From NCBI RefSeq assembly GCF_964188315.1, contig NC_135672.1, forward strand, positions 10,106,001-10,170,000: 64,000 bases of DNA, given 5' to 3'. The stretch is from Podarcis muralis (taxonomy: Eukaryota). The notes below the pieces were generated by a model, which worked only from the letters and a program-made list of their open reading frames with translations, was not told the origin of the DNA and did no database searches. Both the position numbers and the translations under genes were made by a program. Each line of letters starts with the position of its first letter. Within the stretch, counting starts at the first letter, position 1. Below are positions 46,055 to 60,396 of the stretch, piece after piece.

Positions 46055-46381
46055 GCTAAACCACAGAGCCTAGGACTTGCCGATCAGAAGGCCGGCGGTT
46101 TGAATCCCTGCGATGACGGGGTGAGTTCCCGTTGCTCGGTCCCTGCTCCTGCCAACCTAGCAGTTCGAAAACACGTCAAAGTGCAAGTAGATCAATAGGT
46201 ACCACTCCGGCGGGAAGGTAAACGGCATTTCCGTGCGCTGCTCTGGTTCACCAGAAGTGTCTTAGTCATGCTGGCCACATGACAGCTGTACGCTGTCTTG
46301 GCCAATAGAGCGAGATGAGCGCCGGAACCCCAGAGTCGGTCACGACTGGACCTAATGGTCAGGGGTACCTTTACCTTTACC
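46055..46381 (+). mobile_element. Sauria SINE
   Basis: Consensus match, head truncated. Confidence 0.88.
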
Positions 46382-46483
46382 TAATATGGGGATTAGCAGC
46401 TAATAAAAGTTTGGGGGCTCTTTTGTTTGGAGCTTCCAAAGACGCAACCGTCTTCCATAAAGACCAAGCCTACTGGCTGCTGT

Positions 46484-46499
<16 letters not shown>

Positions 46500-46527
<28 letters not shown>

Positions 46528-47780
46528 TTATTTATACCCTGCCCATCTGGCTAAGTTTCCCCAGCCACTCTGGGCGGCTTCCAATCAAGTGTTAAAAACA
46601 ATACAGCATTAAATATTAAAAACTTCCCTAAACAGGGCTGCCTTCAGATGTCTTTTAAAAAGAAGATGGCTGCTTATTTCCTTCACATCTGAAGGGTGTT
46701 CCACAGGGCAGGCGCCACTACCGAGAAGGCCCTCTGTCTGGTTCCCTGTAACCTCACTTCTCACAATGAGGGAACCGCTAGAAGGCCCTCGGAGCTGGTT
46801 CTCAGTGTCCGGGCTGGACAATGGGGGTGGAGACGCTCCTTCAGGTATACAGGACCGAGGCCGTTTAGGGCTTTCAAGCTCAGCACTGACACTTTGAATT
46901 GTACTGGGAGCCAATGTAGGTCTTTCAGGACTGGTGTTATATGGTCTTGGTGGCCACTCTCAGTCACCAGTCTAGCTGCTACATTCTGGATTAGTTGCAG
47001 TTTCTGGGTCACCTTCTAAGGTAGCCCCACAGAGAGCGCATTGGAGTAGTCTAAGAAAGAGATAACCAGAGCATGCACCACTCTGGCAAGACAGTCCGGG
47101 CAGGGAGGGTCTCATCCTGCGTACCAGATGGAGCCGCCCTGGACACAGAACTGACCTGCGCCTCCATGGACAGCTGTGAGTCCAAAATGACTCCCAGGCT
47201 GCGCACCTGGTCCTTCAGGGGCTGGACAATGGGGGTGGAGACGTTCCTTCAGGGATACAGGACCAAGGCCGTTTAGGGCTTGAAAGGTCAGCACCAACAT
47301 TTTGAATTGTGCTCGGAAACGTACTGGGAGCCAATGCAGATCTCTCAGGACCAGTGTTATGTGGTCTCGGCGGTCGCCCCCAGTCACCAGTCTAGCTGCC
47401 GCATTCTGGATTAGTTGTAGTTTCCGTGTCACCTTCAAAGGTAGCACCACGGACAGTGCATTGCAGTAGTCCAAGCGGGAGATAACCAGAGCATGCACCA
47501 CTCTGGTGAGACAGTCTGCGGACAGGGAGGGTCTCATCCTGCATGCTAGATGGAGCTGCCCTGGACACAGAATTGACCTGCACCTCCATGGACAGCTGTG
47601 AGTCCAAAATGACTCCCAGGCTGCGCACCTGGTCCTTCGGGGGCACAGTTACCCCATTCAGGACCATGGAGTCCCCCACACCTGCCCGCCCACTGTCCCC
47701 CCAAAAACAGTACTTCTGTCTTGTCAGGATTCAACCTCAATCCATTAGCCACCACCCATCCTCCAACAGCCTCCAGGCAC
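46500..47780 (-). mobile_element. Rearranged and tandemly duplicated L2 fragments
   Basis: The RLDYCN...HITPVL segment occurs twice with junctions; (ATT)n tail at ~46500. Confidence 0.88.
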
Positions 47781-47800: not shown

Positions 47801-48517
47801 TCAGATTTCTCCGTTAGCAGTGTGCACGTTCCGCATGTGCTTTAAAAGGTTGGACTTGTGATTGAACGCCTTGGAGCACTGCTCGCAGCCGAAGGCCGGC
47901 TGGGCCTGGTGGGTGCGCCGGTGCTGCAGGAAGGTGGAGCGGTGGGTGAAGGCCTTGGCGCACTCGCCGCAGCGGTGCAGCCTCTCGCCCGTGTGCACCC
48001 TCTCGTGCTCCTTGACCGAGGCCTCCCACTTGAAGCGCCGGGCGCAGTGGGCGCAGGCGAAGGGCTTCTCCTGCGTGTGGATGCGCAGGTGCTTCACCAG
48101 GCAAGAGGTGCGCTTGAAGCGCTTGGGGCACTGGTGGCAGGCGAAGGGAGCCTCGTCCGAGTGCACCTTGCCATGCTTGTCCAGGTCGGCCCGCAGCTTG
48201 AAGCGCTTCCCGCAGGTCCGGCAGCGGAAGGGCCGCTTGGCCGAGTGCACAAGGCGGTGCTTGATGAGGTCAGCGCAGCGGGTGAAGGTCTTGGCGCAGC
48301 GCTTGCATTGGTAGGGTCGCTCGCCCGTGTGGATGCGCTGATGCTCGCGGAAGTTCGTCAGGTACTTGATGTCCTTCTCGCAGACGGCGCAGCGGAAGAC
48401 GTCCACCTCGGCGGGAGCGGAGGGGGCCTGGGGGCGCCTCGACTTGCCCAGCCGGACCACCACCTTCCTCCTCTTCTTCCGGGGGCGGGTTTTAGGAGGG
48501 GCACGTCCAGCATCCAT
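47801..48517 (-). CDS. C2H2 zinc-finger protein, 7 tandem fingers, basic NLS-like N-terminus
   Basis: Intact 238-aa ORF with seven C-x2-C...H-x3/4-H fingers, TGERP-type linkers and GC-rich third positions. Acceptor ttgccag| at 48523, 6 nt before the ATG. Confidence 0.93.
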   Translation of the reverse strand: MDAGRAPPKTRPRKKRRKVVVRLGKSRRPQAPSAPAEVDVFRCAVCEKDIKYLTNFREHQRIHTGERPYQCKRCAKTFTRCADLIKHRLVHSAKRPFRCRTCGKRFKLRADLDKHGKVHSDEAPFACHQCPKRFKRTSCLVKHLRIHTQEKPFACAHCARRFKWEASVKEHERVHTGERLHRCGECAKAFTHRSTFLQHRRTHQAQPAFGCEQCSKAFNHKSNLLKHMRNVHTANGEI

Positions 48518-48644
48518 GAGTGCCTGGCAAAGATGGAGCAGAGGCTCTATGGGGGTGGTGGGGTAGATTTATTTATTCATTTCATAAAAGGCATGCACTG
48601 ATTTATTGCAAAAGGAAAAGAAAGATTACTGGGAAATGATACTA

Positions 48645-48859
48645 CAGTGGTACCTCGAGTTACAGACGCTTCAGGTTACGGACTCCGCTAACCCAGAAAT
48701 AGTACCTCGGATTAAGAACTTTGCTTCAGGATGAGAACAGAAATTGCGCGGCGGCAGCTGGAGGCCCCATTAGCTAAAGTGGTGCTTCAGGTTAAGAACA
48801 GTTTCAGGTTAAGAACGGACCTCCGGAACGAATTAAGTACGTAACCAGAGGTACCACTG
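48645..48859. mobile_element. TcMar MITE, same family as 42890
   Basis: Perfect CAGTGGTACCTC terminal inverted repeats (TIRs); TA TSD. Confidence 0.9.
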
Positions 48860-48962
48860 TATTCATTTCATAAAAGGCATACACTGATTTGTTGGAAAAG
48901 GAAAAGAAAGATTACTGGGAAATGATACTAGATTCAAGTAGGTAGCTGTGTTGGTCTGCTGT

Positions 48963-49989: not shown

Positions 49990-50072
49990 TGGGCTCCAGC
50001 AAGAGGAGGCTGGGGATCAAATTGCCAACGGAAGCAGATAAAACTCCCCCAAGTCACAGCTCAGCCGGTACA
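49990..50072 (-). other. Candidate 5'UTR exon of the zinc-finger gene
   Basis: Pyrimidine-rich acceptor ggttttgtttccatctctcttag| and donor |gtaagt, no ATG inside. It lies between the CpG promoter and the coding exon. Prediction only. Confidence 0.4.
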
Positions 50073-50099
50073 CTAAGAGAGATGGAAACAAAACCAGCC

Positions 50100-51130
50100 T
50101 TTTCTGGCATATTAAGGGTAAAGTCACGTTGCCCATACTAAAGATGGCTGCCTGCGCCTCACACCCGCCCAAACAGAACGCCTAGTTCGCCCTGCGAGTT
50201 GGCGCGGCGCTCTGATTGGCTGCTGTTCCAATTCTCGCGACACTTCCTCTATCCTGCAGTTTCGACGGAAATGGACTGCCATAGAGCAGGAAGGGATAGA
50301 CTGGCCATGGGGGGGGGAAACACACACACTCGAATAACTATGATTTTTAAAAATATAATAATACTGGATATCTATCATCGATATGTTGACGCAAAGCAGC
50401 GCTGCCTTATGCCTTAGCAACTTGATGGTAGAGCGCGGCCTATACTTCCGGTAATGATGGAGGGCGGCGCTCTAGCCATCTCCCTATCTTCATGGTGGAA
50501 GCTGGGTTAAAAACAAGAATGGCGGTCGCTTCCCTCGCCGGCTTTTGATTGGCTGCTCGTCTCAAGAGCTCGAGGCGCGGCCCTCACCCAAAATGGCCGA
50601 CGCGCGGCCCTCACTCAAGATGGCGGCCGTCGCTAAGCGGCGCCCTCAGACAAAATGGCGACCAGCGAGAAGCGGCGCTCGGCGGCGGCGGCCGGCGGGA
50701 GCGACCCGGCCCGGCCGTCCCTTCCCTCGAACGGCGCCCCGCCGGAGAGCGAGGCGGAGTTCCTCCTGCAGGCGGGCGTGAGCGACATGGTCCGCGAGGC
50801 CCTCCTGAAGGTGCTGGAGGCGCGGCCTGACGAGCCCGTCGGCTTCCTGGCCGGCTACTTCGAGAGGCTGGCGCAGGGCGGCCCTGAGGAGGCCGAGGCG
50901 GGAGAGGCCTTGTCGGCGGCCGACGGCGGCGGGGAGCCCCGGGGGCTGCTGCGGGGGCGCCTCGGGCGGGCCTTGTGGTACCTGAGCCTGGCTCACCACT
51001 CCCACAGGTGCGGCAGGTGGGAAGGAAGGCCGGGGCGGGAAAAACTACAGCGCCCAGAATGCACCGCGGCAAGATTCGGGGCTCTTTCGCTGTGCTTTGG
51101 CGCGCGGGGCCTCCTGGGACATGAAGTCTT
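50100..51130. promoter_or_regulatory. Bidirectional CpG-island promoter shared by the ZNF gene and TPGS1
   Basis: YY1-type AAnATGGC motifs (50141, 50515, 50589, 50616, 50651), CCAAT boxes (~50213, ~50547), ETS ACTTCCGG (50444), ZNF143-type AACTACAGCGCCCAGAATGCACCGCGG (51043-51069). Confidence 0.7.
50655..51007 (+). CDS. TPGS1: Tubulin polyglutamylase complex subunit 1, exon 1
   Basis: ESEAEFLLQAGVSDMVREALLKVLEARPDEPVGFLAGYF...ALWYLSLAHHSH matches TPGS1; donor AG|gtgcgg. Confidence 0.95.
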
Positions 51131-51254
51131 TCCCCCTTTACCGTTTTTTCAGAGGAAAAGCGAATTATTATTGTTAGCTGCCCTGAGCCCGGCTTCCGGG
51201 ATATAAATAAAAAAATATTATTTATTATTATTATTAGGAAGAGTGAACGCTTTA

Positions 51255-51986: not shown

Positions 51987-52518
51987 GATGGCCTTTAACA
52001 ACAACGTCAGTGTGGCCTATGATTCCCTGTCCGCCGCCGGCAGGCGCAAGAAGCCCGGAGTCAGCGGGAAGCTCTACAGCGAGCTGCTGAGACTGATGTG
52101 CCAAGACAAGGGCACGCCAGAAGACATCGCTCTGCCCCTGCTGAGCAAGGTCGGCTGCCGAGACCACGAGGCGGTGCCCTTTGACATCTTCCGCTACGGC
52201 GTCCTCACCTGCCTGGTCCTCCTCGAATTCCTGGCCAAGGCAGACTTGCTTTTCAACGCACTGGGCGGCGGCTCGGGGGCGGCGGACAAACGAGTCTGTG
52301 CGGCGGTCCTGGGGACCCTGGAAGACGCCCTTTGCCCCGCCGAAGTCGCAGCCCCCATCCGCTTCCTGGAGGCCGGGTCCAAGCTTGGGCCGGATTGCTT
52401 GGCTTCGGCCATGGACAAAGCGCTGGGTGAGCGGAAACCAAGCGTGGCCATGAAGAAAGAGGAGTTCCTCCAGAGAGCCTCGTCCATCTTCGTGGCGAGA
52501 GTGAAACCCGTTGAATGA
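51987..52518 (+). CDS. TPGS1: TPGS1 exon 2
   Basis: ccgtag|G; AFNNNVSVAYDSLSAAGRRKKPG...CRDHEAVP...FLEAGSKLGPD...FVARVKPVE*. Joined CDS 885 nt, 294 aa. Confidence 0.96.
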
Positions 52519-56299: not shown

Positions 56300-56930
56300 C
56301 TCCTCGCAAAGCCTCCTGGGAAATGCAGTCCTCGCCCTCCGGTCCCGCCCTCTCCCCCACCTCCAGAGACGCCGCTCATTGGTAGCCGCGCGTGATGGGC
56401 GGGGACGAGGGCGTGTCGCCGCCGCCGCCGCCTCCAGGGGAGGAACTACGCCTCCCAAGCGGCCCCGCGCGCGCTCTCTCTGTTGTTGTCTTCGCCGTTC
56501 CAGCGGCTCGAGCCCCTCCGCGGCGCTCTTTCGGGTCCGCAGCGGCCTTCTCCCTCCGCGCGCGCCTCCCCCTCCGCCCGCCGCCCTTTCCCCCCTCCCC
56601 TCCCCGCCACGCTCCTCCTCTCCCCCGGCCTCGCCGCTCACGCGAGCCCCCGGCTTCACCCGAGGCCTACCCGTTCCCTCCGACCATGGCGCGGCCGTCC
56701 GTGCCCAGCTCGCAGAAGGCGCTGCTGCTGGAGCTGAAGGGGCTCCAGGAGGAGCCCGTGGAGGGTTTCCGCGTCAGCCTGGTGGACGAGGGGGACCTCT
56801 ACAACTGGGAGGTGGCCATCTTCGGGCCCCCCAACACCCACTACGAGGGCGGCTACTTCAAGGTGAGACGGCGCAGGGGGGAGGCTGGGGGTCGCGGGTG
56901 GAAAAACACACGGGGGCTGGGCCTTACTCC
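56300..56930 (+). promoter_or_regulatory. CDC34 CpG-island promoter
   Basis: CpG-rich; ZNF143-type ACTACGCCTCCCAAG at 56445; GC boxes; CCAAT (ATTGG) at ~56378. Confidence 0.75.
56686..56862 (+). CDS. CDC34: Ubiquitin-conjugating enzyme E2 R1, exon 1
   Basis: MARPSVPSSQKALLLELKGLQEEPVEGFRVSLVDEGDLYNWEVAIFGPPNTHYEGGYFK; donor AAG|gtgaga. Exon 2 was not found in the window. Confidence 0.97.
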
Positions 56931-59275
56931 AGAGGAGACCCGCTTTAAAGTAGAAGGAAGTGGCTGGGTTGGGTCCTTTGGCCTCCAAGAGGGTCTACTG
57001 TGAAGCAGGGCGAGTTTTACTCCAGAGGAGACCCACTGAAAGTAGAAGGAAGTGGCTGGGTTGGGTCCTTTGGCCTCCCAGAGGGTCTGCTTTGAGGCAG
57101 GGCGGGTTTTACTCCAGAGGAGACCCACTGAAAGTAGAAGGAAGTGGCTGATTTGGGTCCTTTGGCCTCCAAAGGGTCTATTCTGAGGCAGGGCGAGTTT
57201 TACTCCAGAGGAGACCCACTTTAAAGTAGAAGGAAGTGGCTGGGTTGGGTCCTTTGGCCTCCAAGAGGGTCTACTGTGAAGCAGGGCGAGTTTTACTCCA
57301 GAGGAGACCCACTGAAAGGAAAAAGATATGGCGGATTTGGGTCCTTTGGCCTCCAAAGGGTCTATTCTGAGGCAGGGCGAGTTTTACTCCAGAGGAGACC
57401 CACTGAAAGTAGAAGGAAGTGGCTGGGTTGGGTCCTTTGGCCTCCAAGTGGGTCTACTCTAAAGCAGGGCGAGTGTTAATCCTGCTCTAGAGGAAACCCA
57501 CTTTAAACTAAAAGGACATGGCTGATTTGGGTCCTTTGGCTTCCAAGAGGGTCTGCTTTGAGGCAGGGCGAGTTTTACTCCAGAGGAGACCCACTGAAAG
57601 TAGAAGGATGTGGCTGATTTGGGTCCATTGGCCGCCAAGAGGGTCTACTGTGAAGCAGGGCAAGTTTTACTCCAGAGGAGACCCACTTAAAGTAGAAGGA
57701 AGTGGCTGGGTTGGGTCCTTTGGCCTCCCAGAGGGTCTGCTTTGAGGCAGGGCGGGTTTTACTCCAGAGGAGACCCACTGAAAGTAGAAGGAAGTGGCTG
57801 ATTTGGGTCCTTTGGCCTCCAAAGGGTCTATTCTGAGGCAGGGCGAGTTTTACTCCAGAGGAGACCCACTTTAAAGTAGAAGGAAGTGGCTGGGTTGGGT
57901 CCTTTGGCCTCCAAGAGGGTCTACTGTGAAGCAGGGCGAGTTTTACTCCAGAGGAGACCCACTGAAAGGAAAAAGATATGGCGGATTTGGGTCCTTTGGC
58001 CTCCAAAGGGTCTATTCTGAGGCAGGGCGAGTTTTACTCCAGAGGAGACCCACTGAAAGTAGAAGGAAGTGGCTGGGTTGGGTCCTTTGGCCTCCAAGTG
58101 GGTCTACTCTAAAGCAGGGCGAGTGTTAATCCTGCTCTAGAGGAAACCCACTTTAAACTAAAAGGACATGGCTGATTTGGGTCCTTTGGCTTCCAAGAGG
58201 GTCTGCTTTGAGGCAGGGCGAGTTTTACTCCAGAGGAGACCCACTGAAAGTAGAAGGATGTGGCTGATTTGGGTCCATTGGCCGCCAAGAGGGTCTACTG
58301 TGAAGCAGGGCAAGTTTTACTCCAGAGGAGACCCACTTAAAGTAGAAGGAAGTGGCTGGTTTGGGTCCTTTGGCCTCCAGGAGGGTCTGCTTTGAGGCAG
58401 GGCGAGTTTTACTCCAGAGGAGACCCACTGAAAGTAGAAGGAAGTGGCTGATTTGGGTCCTTTGGCCTCTAAAGGGTCTATTCTGAGGCAGGGCGAGTTT
58501 TACACCAGAGGAGACCCACTTAAAGTAGAAGGAAGTGGCTGGGTTGGGTCCTTTGGCCTCCAGGAGGGTCTGCTTTGAGGCAGGGTGAGTTTTACTCCAG
58601 AGGAGACCCACTTAAAGTAGAAGGAAGTGGCTGGGTTGGGTCCTTTGGCCTCCAAGAGGGTCTACTGTGAAGCAGGGCGAGTTTTACTCCAGAGGAGACC
58701 CACTGAAAGTAGAAGGAAGTGGCTGGGTTGGGTCCTTTGGCCTCCAAGAGGGTCTACTGTGAAGCAGGGCGAGTTTTACTCCAGAGGAGACCCACTGAAT
58801 GTAGAAGGAAGTGGCTGGGTTGGGTCCTTTGGCCTCCAAGTGGGTCTACTGTGAAGCAGGGCGAGTTTTACTCCAGAGGAGACCCACTTAAAGTAGAAGG
58901 AAGTGGCTGGTTTGGGTCCTTTGGCCTCCAGGAGGGTCTGCTTTGAGGCAGGGCGAGTTTTACTCCAGAGGAGACCCACTTAAAGTAGAAGGATGTGGCT
59001 GGTTTGGGTCCTTTGGCCGCCAAGAGTGTCTACTTTGAGGCAGGGCGAGTTTTACTCCAGAGGAGACCCACTGAAAGTAGAAGGAAGTGGCTGGGTTGGG
59101 TCCTTTGGCCTCCAAGAGGGTCTACTGTGAAGCAGGGCGAGTTTTACTCCAGAGGAGACCCACTGAAAGTAGAAGGAAGTGGCTGGGTTGGGTCCTTTGG
59201 CCTCCAAGAGGGTCTACTGTGAAGCAGGGCGAGTTTTACTCCAGAGGAGACCTACTGAAAAGAAAAGGATATGGC
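56924..59275. repeat. 92-bp tandem satellite, about 25-26 copies, in CDC34 intron 1
   Basis: Unit TTTTACTCCAGAGGAGACCCACTGAAAGTAGAAGGAAGTGGCTGGGTTGGGTCCTTTGGCCTCCAAGAGGGTCTACTGTGAAGCAGGGCGAG. ORF-track offsets of 92 and 650 confirm the periods. Confidence 0.97.
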
Positions 59276-60396
59276 CGGCATGTGTGCCTTGATTTCAGTG
59301 GTTCCACGATGGAGCAGGATGATTTGTAACCCTACTCCAAAGTAATAAATGGGCATGACTTGGTGGGCTACTCTGGAGTATTAAGTTTTGCCTTCATGTT
59401 CCCATTGCAGTTGTGGCTAAATTGGGACCACTGTCCTCAACTGAGTCTGCCCTAAAGCGGGGCGGGTTTTAGCCAGTGTTAGTCCTACACCAGAGGAGAC
59501 CCATTGAAGGTAAAAGGACGTGGTTGCCTTGGGGCCCATGGACTTCAGCTAGTCTGCTGTGACGGAGAAGTCCTACCCAGTGTTAGTTCTACCCAAGACC
59601 CCTTGAAATTAAACAACAAGGGTGACTTGGGTCCACTGACTTCAGTGGGCCTACTTTGGAGTAAGACAATATGTACCCAGAGTGGAGCCATTGTGGTTAA
59701 TGGACGTTGCTGGAGTTTAGACAAGTTTCTGGACACAGGACACACCTTTTTACGCTGTGTTTTCAGGATCCACCCCCATTCCCGTGACTGTGATTCTACT
59801 CTGAAGTAGGACCCGGACAGATACGACGCTTTGCCTTGAAATAGGGGCAAGAGGGAATCATTTCTATCCTTGTAACAAGAGAATAAACTTCTTTTCCTGT
59901 CTCTCCCCTCCTCCGTTTAAAACGAAGGCAGTAAATCGCTTAAGGCGGTATCCAACCTACATTATACTAAGCCCTTTGAAAGCAATGGTGTTAAAATTAT
60001 CTCTAACCTAAGAGTTGTAGCCAGTGTTAGTCATGTTCAGAGCGGAGTGCCATGGAAATCAAAATTATGAGCAACAGAAGAATGGCGTGAGTTAGCAGAG
60101 CTAATGTCCCATCTAATTTAAGCATCCTGTTTTTACAATGAGCAACCAGGTGCCCGTTTTGGGAAAACCACAAACACAACAGCAACACTTGCAGTTCCCG
60201 ACACCCGGCGTTCAGAACCATATTGCCTCAACTGCAGAAGTAGAGCATAGCCATGAGGCATTGTAATCCTCTATGAATTTGTCCAGTCCTCTTTTAAAAC
60301 CCTCTGAGTCTGTGGCCACCACTGTCTTCCGCAGGAGCGAGTTCCATGGGTTTACTCTCTGGTGGGTGAATAAGTCCTACTTATAAGTAAGTAGGA

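What the first reader, a model, noticed from the sequence alone, without database searches (positions are those of the whole stretch)
47801..48523. Extra 7-finger zinc-finger gene inside the conserved SHC2-ODF3L2-MADCAM1-TPGS1-CDC34 block
Seen: an intact ORF, all coding in one exon, with RPRKKRRK NLS and no KRAB/SCAN/BTB sequence in that exon. Contact residues (-1,2,3,6): YTNE, RADK, LADK, RSCK, WASE, HSTQ, HSNK; Tyr, Leu and Trp at -1 are unusual. Known: I recall no gene between MADCAM1 and TPGS1 in human. Inference: either an ancestral amniote gene lost in mammals or a squamate insertion that captured the TPGS1 promoter. It is the best candidate here for an uncharacterised gene. An upstream phase-0 coding exon cannot be excluded.
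Basis: partly seen in the sequence, partly recalled or inferred. Interest (0 to 1): 0.7.

Follow-up and report, generated by a model that had tools for sequence, protein, structure and literature searches.

The report
Ancient unnamed zinc-finger gene beside TPGS1
The ORF is a real, selectively constrained seven-finger DNA-binding gene that has sat between MADCAM1 and TPGS1 since at least the frog-reptile ancestor, has close relatives in gar and arapaima, and is missing at that position in the rabbit, two birds and Xenopus, which probably explains why it has no name.

Summary
Minus strand 47801-48517 holds an intact 238-codon ORF: a basic N-terminal patch followed by seven C2H2 fingers.

The window is Podarcis muralis. 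The gene is not a squamate insertion. Orthologues of 55-95% identity lie in the same slot, head-to-head with TPGS1 and with MADCAM1 on the far side, in P. lilfordi, Crocodylus porosus and the frog Ascaphus. Gekko and the snake Pantherophis show the TPGS1 adjacency only. Gar, Arapaima, seven frogs and two turtles have clear orthologous proteins.

The base-contacting residues of fingers 2-7, including the odd Leu and Trp at position -1, are almost invariant from gar to lizard. Against P. lilfordi, dN/dS is about 0.1 in the fingers and about 1 in the first 40 residues.

Nothing is left of the gene within 10 kb of TPGS1 in rabbit, emu, falcon or Xenopus tropicalis.

Sauropsid copies are a single coding exon without the long acidic N-terminus. 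They also lack the intron after finger 1 seen in frog and fish. The upstream exons of the P. lilfordi model are 5'UTR.

My verdict is an ordinary kind of gene (a C2H2 transcription factor) with an interesting history: ancient, unnamed and repeatedly lost.

The parts
47801..48517 (-). Complete coding sequence of 238 aa plus stop, in a single coding exon. It encodes a basic N-terminal patch (aa 1-40, with RPRKKRRK at 11-18) and seven C2H2 fingers (aa 43-232).
   Evidence: 95% aa identity to the same ORF in P. lilfordi L005:11805-12521
48518..48523 (-). Six nucleotides of 5' leader (GCACTC) between the splice acceptor (...ctttgccag|) and the ATG.
   Evidence: The acceptor is the one used in the P. 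lilfordi model. The leader is 13 nt in P. lilfordi, so no frame is conserved across it.
49990..50076 (-). Probable non-coding exon 2 (5'UTR), approximate limits. Its acceptor (tctcttag|) and donor (|gtaagtgg) are conserved with P. lilfordi.
   Evidence: a 2-nt indel between the two species inside it shows it is not coding
50165..50282 (-). Probable non-coding exon 1 and core promoter, approximate limits. It holds a CCAAT box (CAGCCAATCAG) and is 96% identical to P. lilfordi against about 90% for the surrounding DNA.
50200..51200 (.). CpG island shared by the divergently oriented ZNF gene and TPGS1 (TPGS1 ATG at 50655). Inferred to be a bidirectional promoter.
   Evidence: CpG o/e 0.8-1.2, GC up to 0.76; gene orientation

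Best explanation
This is the Podarcis muralis copy of an old, unnamed, single-copy vertebrate gene for a sequence-specific DNA-binding protein. It encodes a short basic (nuclear-localisation) N-terminus followed by seven tandem C2H2 fingers.

Shown here: the ORF is intact, and its fingers are under purifying selection. The gene has kept its place next to TPGS1, head-to-head, with MADCAM1 on the other side, since at least the frog-amniote ancestor. It has orthologues in gar and Arapaima. The base-contacting residues of fingers 2-7 have hardly changed across these species.

Inferred: the protein enters the nucleus and reads one conserved, roughly 18-bp target through fingers 2-7. By the textbook recognition code the target is probably GC-rich, with RADK-LADK-RSCK suggesting a core like GNG-GCN-GCG. 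The gene is transcribed from the CpG-island promoter it shares with TPGS1, through one or two short non-coding exons spliced to an acceptor 6 nt before the ATG.

The sauropsid form has no effector domain. It would therefore act by occupying its sites or by recruiting partners through the finger array. The frog and fish forms carry an extra acidic N-terminal region of 110-200 aa in the same exon as finger 1, which may be an activation domain, and they have an intron after finger 1. The single-exon croc, gecko and lacertid copies lack that intron, and all sauropsid copies seen lack the acidic region.

The gene is missing at this position in rabbit, two birds and Xenopus, and no orthologue turned up among mammal, bird or most teleost proteins in the one word search that could have shown it. 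It is thus absent, or unseen, in the main model vertebrates, which is the likely reason it has no curated name.
For: ORF and domains.

Orthologues: P. lilfordi 92-95%, Gekko 72-86%, Crocodylus 69%, turtles 59-65%, seven frogs 57-66%, gar 62%, Arapaima 58%. Generic ZNF hits reach about 35-47%.

Synteny: TPGS1(-)/ZNF(+)/ICAM_N-Ig(-) in Ascaphus and P. lilfordi. TPGS1/ZNF in Gekko. MADCAM1/ZNF/TPGS1/CDC34 in Crocodylus. A 230-aa gene about 9.7 kb upstream of TPGS1 in Pantherophis.

Selection: against P. lilfordi there are 30 differences in 717 nt. Overall omega is 0.07 (ML) to 0.28. Fingers give 0.10 and the first 40 aa give 1.0. Against Gekko and Crocodylus, ML omega is 0.01-0.05.

Fingerprint: mean identity at the 28 contact positions is 0.83, against 0.58 at other non-structural finger positions, across 13 species. 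Leu (F3), Arg (F4), Trp (F5) and His (F6) at position -1 are invariant.

Upstream exons are non-coding. No Pfam domain is found in the 2.1-kb spacer or in the frog and fish N-termini.

Losses: no tblastn or orthologue-HMM signal within 10 kb of TPGS1 in rabbit, emu, falcon or X. tropicalis.

Nearest solved structures are DNA-bound tandem finger arrays: ZFP568, Aart, PRDM9 and CTCF (queried with the crocodile orthologue).
Against: The word search returned no protein identical to this ORF, which suggests that the P. muralis annotation does not carry it as a 131-416-aa product.

The only lacertid model, from P. lilfordi, has N- and C-terminal extensions that are not conserved in P. muralis. That pipeline mixes RNA evidence with ab initio calls, so the model is only a hint of transcription.

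No AATAAA or ATTAAA occurs within about 1.2 kb downstream of the stop. DNA binding, the target motif, nuclear import and the shared promoter are all inferred, not shown. The Gekko japonicus assembly carries a 10-nt tandem duplication that breaks the frame. A relocated or much longer mammalian orthologue is not formally excluded (one search was swamped by poly-ZNF proteins). Linkage to TPGS1 could not be shown in fish.
Confidence: 0.8

Rival explanations
1. The ORF is a squamate-specific or lacertid-specific insertion (a retrocopy or dispersed ZNF duplicate) that landed next to TPGS1 and borrowed its promoter.
For: The gene has a single coding exon with no effector domain and is flanked by LINE and SINE fragments. 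The sauropsid copies lack the intron present in frog and fish.
Against: The same gene is in the same slot and orientation in a frog, a crocodile, a gecko, a snake and another lacertid. The fingerprint is shared with gar and Arapaima. The flanking repeats lie outside the ORF.
Confidence: 0.02
2. The ORF is a silent relic: an ancestral gene no longer expressed in lacertids, still open by chance and on its way to the loss seen in birds and mammals.
For: There is no RNA evidence here. It is apparently not annotated as a protein in P. muralis. No nearby polyA signal exists. The gene has been lost repeatedly elsewhere. The Gekko assembly carries a frameshift.
Against: Omega is about 0.1 in the fingers between two Podarcis species, while the N-terminus evolves at omega about 1 and the flanks differ by about 10%. 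Start, stop and length are the same in both species. The promoter and 5'UTR exons are 96% conserved with their splice sites kept. CpG o/e is 0.7-1.1 inside the ORF against 0.2-0.5 in the flanks.
Confidence: 0.08
3. The gene is real, but the fingers mainly bind RNA or proteins, or it has a named orthologue in mammals that moved elsewhere and diverged or grew longer than 416 aa.
For: Three of the six linkers are non-canonical (SDEAPF, QAQPAF, SAKRPF). Leu, Trp and Tyr at position -1 are rare in DNA-reading fingers. There is a weak zf-C2H2_jaz hit. The search for longer relatives was uninformative.
Against: The invariance is concentrated at the canonical base-contact positions. The best solved relatives are DNA-bound arrays. 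No mammalian or avian protein above 48% identity appeared in either word search, while true orthologues score 55% or more.
Confidence: 0.1

Closest known systems
Deeply conserved 'ZNF-only' polydactyl C2H2 transcription factors with rigid fingerprints (the class described by Liu, Chang and Stubbs 2014, PMC3971581)
   Same: It has a tandem Krüppel-type finger array, no KRAB, SCAN or BTB domain, and is single-copy. Its DNA-contact residues are preserved over hundreds of millions of years, which that paper takes as the sign of a fixed regulatory role.
   Different: That catalogue is built around human genes. This gene appears to have no mammalian or avian member at all, and it is absent from Xenopus tropicalis, so it falls outside that catalogue.
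Automatic database names of the orthologues: 'zinc finger protein 79-like' (P. lilfordi), '792-like' (Gekko), '682-like' (Pelobates), '436-like' (Pseudophryne), '501-like' (gar), '13-like' (Arapaima)
   Same: These are the same gene as the window ORF by sequence, with synteny shown for the P. lilfordi and Gekko copies.
   Different: The names are best-hit labels that disagree with one another. The mammalian proteins that surfaced in the word searches (for example ZNF784, GLI4, ZNF7, ZNF180) share only about 30-48% identity, the generic finger level. None of these names implies orthology.
Solved DNA-bound finger arrays: ZFP568 (5v3m), Aart (2i13), PRDM9 (5v3g), CTCF (7w1m, 8ssq)
   Same: They share the fold and the mode of action expected here: each finger's helix lies in the major groove, reading about 3 bp through positions -1, 2, 3 and 6.
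   Different: The similarity is generic and there is no orthology. Those proteins have effector or partner domains (KRAB, PR/SET, the CTCF termini) that the lizard protein lacks.

Membership tests
Krüppel-type tandem C2H2 zinc-finger proteins | Repeated C-x2-4-C-x12-H-x3-5-H units with the conserved hydrophobic core (Phe and Leu) | tested here: met
   Seven units are found by pattern. Pfam zf-C2H2 scores 88 bits against a cut-off of 25.2, and zf-H2C2_2 scores 108 bits against 40.
Krüppel-type tandem C2H2 zinc-finger proteins | TGEKP-like linkers of 7 residues between fingers | tested here: met
   All six linkers have the canonical length. TGERPYQ, TQEKPFA and TGERLHR are close to consensus. 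SAKRPFR, SDEAPFA and QAQPAFG are divergent (read from the translation).
KRAB-, SCAN- or BTB-zinc-finger subfamilies | An N-terminal KRAB, SCAN or BTB/POZ domain in the same gene | tested here: not met
   No such Pfam hit occurs in the ORF. None occurs in any minus-strand open segment of 35 aa or more between the ATG and TPGS1. The upstream exons are non-coding.
The TPGS1-adjacent seven-finger ZNF orthologue group (unnamed) | Position between MADCAM1 and TPGS1, divergent from TPGS1 | tested here: met
   Seen in the window, P. lilfordi, Ascaphus and Crocodylus. Gekko and Pantherophis show only the TPGS1 adjacency, because MADCAM1 was not in the fetched flank.
The TPGS1-adjacent seven-finger ZNF orthologue group (unnamed) | Shared fingerprint across seven fingers (xxxE / RADK / LxDK / RxCK / WxSE / HSTQ / HSNK) | tested here: met
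   fingers 2-7 are identical or nearly so in 13 species.
The TPGS1-adjacent seven-finger ZNF orthologue group (unnamed) | Transcribed and translated in the animal | not testable with these tools
Only an evidence-mixed P. lilfordi gene model exists.

The most novel reading that the evidence does not exclude
This is a transcription factor with a frozen DNA-reading surface that was part of the ancestral bony-vertebrate toolkit. It was discarded independently in both warm-blooded lineages (mammals and birds), and in pipid frogs and most teleosts. In sauropsids it was also stripped of its acidic N-terminal domain and its intron, perhaps changing from an activator into a bare site-occupying factor. 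If so, it marks a conserved regulatory circuit that no standard model organism can reveal. The repeated losses would point to a function tied to something those lineages gave up.
Probability: 0.2. Interest if true: 0.6.

Novelty: new member of a known kind. Interest (0 to 1): 0.42.

Why it matters
The gene belongs to the best-known family of animal transcription factors, so the kind is not new. Three things make it worth noting.

First, it is a single-copy regulator. Its DNA-reading residues are almost unchanged from gar to lizards, a split dated at more than 400 million years by established phylogeny. That is the signature of a fixed and probably important target set.

Second, it is missing from its slot in the rabbit, two birds and Xenopus tropicalis, and no orthologue appeared among mammal, bird or most teleost proteins. 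It has therefore never been studied or named, and annotation pipelines give it contradictory names or miss it.

Third, its position beside TPGS1 gives a simple anchor for tracing each loss.

It is a concrete candidate for work on gene loss in endotherms, and for reptile or frog functional genomics.

Tried and rejected
I also did not look for the ORF's product in run assemblies with another tool. The solved-structure search used the crocodile orthologue, and everything else on the ORF was local computation.

2. A search for longer relatives, using the frog protein's finger region and candidates of 222-705 aa. Poly-ZNF proteins of 40-48% identity out-scored true orthologues: 592 bits for a ZNF7 against 451 for the query itself. 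The search therefore says nothing about absence.

3. For the same reason I did not spend the large representative search. A top-150 list ranked by summed finger scores cannot show that mammals lack the gene.

4. Upstream coding exons. tblastn of frog, fish and turtle N-termini against the window found nothing. The one exception is the Chrysemys model's N-terminus, which matches the antisense of TPGS1 exon 2 and so is a model artefact, though it is also a sign of adjacency in the turtle. Pfam on the ten longest of the 17 minus-strand open segments in the spacer found nothing.

5. Relics of the gene in emu, falcon, rabbit and Xenopus. tblastn and an orthologue-HMM search of six-frame translations gave only chance-level hits.

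6. Synteny in fish. The gar protein is not on record. The Arapaima locus has no TPGS1, CDC34 or MADCAM1 within 10 kb.

7. The Chrysemys TPGS1 look-up failed.

8. Literature searches for a name found none.

TPGS1 was searched by exon 2 alone, by reference.

Full report
**1. The observation**

The minus strand of the window carries an ATG-to-stop ORF of 238 codons at 47801..48517. An in-frame stop lies 21 codons upstream of the ATG. Pfam scores the product well above the gathering cut-offs for zf-H2C2_2 (108 bits) and zf-C2H2 (88 bits) and finds no other kind of domain.

A pattern scan finds seven C-x2-C-x12-H-x3/4-H fingers. The basic stretch RPRKKRRK is at residues 11-18.

The stated neighbourhood is also there:
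- MADCAM1-like immunoglobulin and mucin exons lie on the + strand at about 36.2-41.9 kb.
- TPGS1 exons lie at 50655-50870 (RIIa) and 51988-52515 (TPGS1_C, 3e-71).
- The first CDC34 exon (UQ_con) lies near 56.7-56.9 kb.

TPGS1 exon 2 is 100% identical to Podarcis muralis TPGS1, so the window is from the common wall lizard. The ZNF gene and TPGS1 point away from each other, with 2.1 kb between their start codons.

**2. What it is**

The word search gave one near-identical protein, P. lilfordi 'finger 79-like'. It also gave a distinct set of hits at 57-72% identity: seven frogs, gar, Arapaima, Gekko and two turtles. Ordinary zinc-finger proteins stop at roughly 35-47%. The alignment shows all seven fingers in register in every complete sequence.

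Fetching the DNA around these genes shows the same arrangement everywhere it could be seen:
- Ascaphus truei: TPGS1 (-), ZNF (+), an ICAM_N/Ig gene (-).
- P. lilfordi: the same order.
- Gekko japonicus: TPGS1 and ZNF head-to-head.
- Crocodylus porosus: MADCAM1, then a 235-aa single-exon gene on the opposite strand, then TPGS1 and CDC34. That 235-aa gene is 69% identical to the lizard protein.
- The snake Pantherophis: a 230-aa gene about 9.7 kb upstream of TPGS1, whose visible first 87 residues are 63% identical.
- Chrysemys: the Ensembl model begins with a translation of the antisense strand of TPGS1 exon 2. This is an artefact, but it shows that the turtle gene also abuts TPGS1.

The gene is therefore ancestral to tetrapods at this position. 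Because of the gar and Arapaima orthologues, it is ancestral to bony vertebrates as a gene. Whether it is linked to TPGS1 in fish could not be seen. The gar protein is not on record, and the Arapaima locus has none of the neighbours within 10 kb.

**3. Constraint**

Against P. lilfordi the ORF differs at 30 of 717 nucleotides, 16 of them at third positions. It keeps the same start, stop and length.
- Overall omega is 0.22 (NG86) or 0.07 (ML).
- The fingers give 0.10.
- The first 40 residues give about 1.0 and hold 8 of the 12 amino-acid changes.
- The surrounding aligned DNA is about 90% identical.
- Against Gekko and Crocodylus the fingers give ML omega of 0.01-0.05. Synonymous sites are saturated, so NG86 values are higher.

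Across 13 species from gar to lizard, identity to the lizard residue averages 0.83 at the 28 base-contact positions. It averages 0.58 at other non-structural positions in the fingers. In fingers 2-7 most contact positions are invariant.

Only finger 1 varies, with Tyr in squamates and mostly His elsewhere. A basic patch just before finger 1 is present in every orthologue.

**4. Gene structure**

The P. lilfordi model has four exons with canonical sites: two short 5' exons next to the TPGS1 island, the finger exon, and a small 3' exon.

In the window the first two exons and their splice sites are 96% conserved, and they include a CCAAT box. The acceptor ...ctttgccag| sits 6 nt before the ATG. 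However, the two species differ by a 2-nt indel inside exon 2. They also differ by 7 nt between the acceptor and the ATG. The 76-residue N-terminal extension in the P. lilfordi model therefore cannot be conserved coding sequence.

The true start is the MDAG methionine, shared with Gekko (MDAG) and aligned with a turtle methionine (MEAG).

The model's alternative C-terminus uses a weak donor inside the last finger and an acceptor that is missing in P. muralis. The conserved end is the unspliced one.

No Pfam domain is encoded in the ten longest of the 17 minus-strand open segments of 35 aa or more in the spacer.

In frog and Arapaima the first coding exon holds a 110-200-residue acidic region with no Pfam match, plus finger 1. 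An intron follows finger 1. The croc, gecko and lacertid genes read through that point in one exon, and the turtle proteins likewise begin about 40 residues before finger 1. The sauropsid lineage therefore lost the acidic region, and at least croc and squamates lost the intron.

**5. Where it is missing**

Using TPGS1 proteins as anchors, I fetched 10 kb on each side of TPGS1 in four species:
- Rabbit: MADCAM1 ends 739 bp before TPGS1.
- Emu: 2.6 kb gap.
- Falcon: 1.3 kb gap.
- Xenopus tropicalis: 4.4 kb gap.

I then ran tblastn with lizard, crocodile and frog proteins, and an HMM of the orthologues' fingers against six-frame translations. Both gave only chance-level matches in all four species. 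The same HMM scores 299-360 bits on the crocodile, frog and Arapaima loci.

So the gene is gone from its slot in a placental mammal, in a palaeognath and a neognath bird, and in Xenopus. Rhinophrynus, traditionally placed as sister to pipids, keeps it. No mammalian or avian protein above 48% identity appeared in either word search.

The second search was swamped by poly-ZNF proteins, so a relocated, longer orthologue is not strictly excluded. That swamping is why I did not run the large representative search. From memory only, human has no gene between MADCAM1 and TPGS1. I did not look at human sequence.

**6. How it most likely works**

Shown: it is an intact, constrained gene for a protein made almost entirely of a basic patch and seven canonical fingers, kept next to a CpG island (CpG o/e 0.8-1.2 at 50.2-51.2 kb) that it shares with a divergent housekeeping-type neighbour.

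Inferred from established knowledge of C2H2 arrays, and from the nearest solved structures, which are all DNA-bound arrays (ZFP568, Aart, PRDM9, CTCF): the protein is nuclear and reads a long site, with fingers 2-7 contributing a fixed specificity. By the simple recognition code the middle fingers (RADK, LADK, RSCK) suggest a GC-rich core of the type GNG-GCN-GCG. This is a low-confidence guess, especially for the Leu, Trp and His fingers.

Lacking any effector domain, the sauropsid protein would act by occupancy or through partners bound to the fingers. The acidic N-terminus of frogs and fish could be an activation domain. Transcription from a promoter shared with TPGS1 is inferred from the geometry, the conserved 5' exons and the P. 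lilfordi model. That model comes from a pipeline that combined RNA-seq and Iso-Seq with ab initio prediction (PMC10214862), so it is only a hint.

**7. What could not be done**

This is the main gap.

The word search returned no protein identical to the ORF, which suggests the species' own annotation does not list it. No AATAAA or ATTAAA lies within about 1.2 kb downstream of the stop, so the 3' end is undefined.

The Gekko japonicus assembly has a 10-nt tandem duplication (CATCCACACA twice) that shifts the frame after finger 4. The downstream part is as constrained as the upstream part (omega 0.03-0.16), so this is either an assembly error or a very recent change.

**8. Comparison and verdict**

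The gene is a member of the Krüppel-type C2H2 family. It is not a KRAB, SCAN or BTB member. It fits the class of deeply conserved 'ZNF-only' factors with rigid fingerprints discussed by Liu, Chang and Stubbs (PMC3971581), but has no human counterpart.

Its orthologues exist in databases only under automatic, mutually contradictory names. Literature searches found no study or curated name.

My verdict:
- The 'ancestral gene lost in mammals' reading is right, and the gene is older than proposed.
- The 'squamate insertion' reading is wrong.
- The kind of gene is ordinary. Its history (ancient, fingerprint-frozen, unnamed, repeatedly lost, restructured in sauropsids) is moderately interesting.

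Noticed in passing
L001:10415-10435 (Gekko japonicus KQ749667.1): A 10-nt tandem duplication (CATCCACACA twice) frameshifts the gecko orthologue after finger 4. NCBI's 215-aa 'ZNF792-like' model reads on in the wrong frame. The true downstream frame is intact and constrained, so this is an assembly error or a very recent lesion.
   Followed up: partly
window 52197-52358 (-) versus protein P0015: The Ensembl Chrysemys picta model of the orthologue starts with 54 residues that are 59% identical to the antisense translation of TPGS1 exon 2. This is a model artefact that incidentally shows the turtle gene lies next to TPGS1.
   Followed up: partly
window 48563-48644 and 48860-48927: Two copies, about 70-80 bp each, of the same sequence (tcatttcataaaaggcat.cactgattt.ttg.aaaaggaaaagaaagattactgggaaatgatacta) flank a SINE-like element (48645-48860) in the ZNF gene's 5' intron. 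The same arrangement is present in P. lilfordi.
   Followed up: no
window 46056-47760: Directly downstream of the stop codon lie nested, repeated fragments of a LINE reverse-transcriptase C-terminus (ORFs with ...LQLIQNAAARLVTG...DHITPVLKDLHWLPV...). Many copies occur elsewhere in the window and in L005. Any 3'UTR must run through them.
   Followed up: no
window 47858-48601 (+): A 247-aa open frame lies antisense to the ZNF coding sequence. It is Gly/Ala/Leu-rich with no domain, and looks like the usual mirror ORF of a GC-rich CDS rather than a gene.
   Followed up: no
window 56850-59330: A tandem array of roughly 90-650-bp units just after CDC34 exon 1 produces repeated 75-aa and 128-167-aa ORFs on both strands. 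The scan already holds a note on it (s1-153203).
   Followed up: no
L010 (Xenopus tropicalis CM004443.2) versus protein P0007 (Rhinophrynus dorsalis): Xenopus tropicalis has no trace of the ZNF gene between its MADCAM1-like gene and TPGS1, while Rhinophrynus keeps a 378-aa orthologue. This points to a loss within or at the base of Pipidae.
   Followed up: partly
window 47801-48400: The ORF is a local CpG-rich patch (GC 0.64-0.67, CpG o/e 0.7-1.1) set between CpG-poor flanks (o/e 0.2-0.5). It is separate from the promoter island at 50.2-51.2 kb.
   Followed up: no
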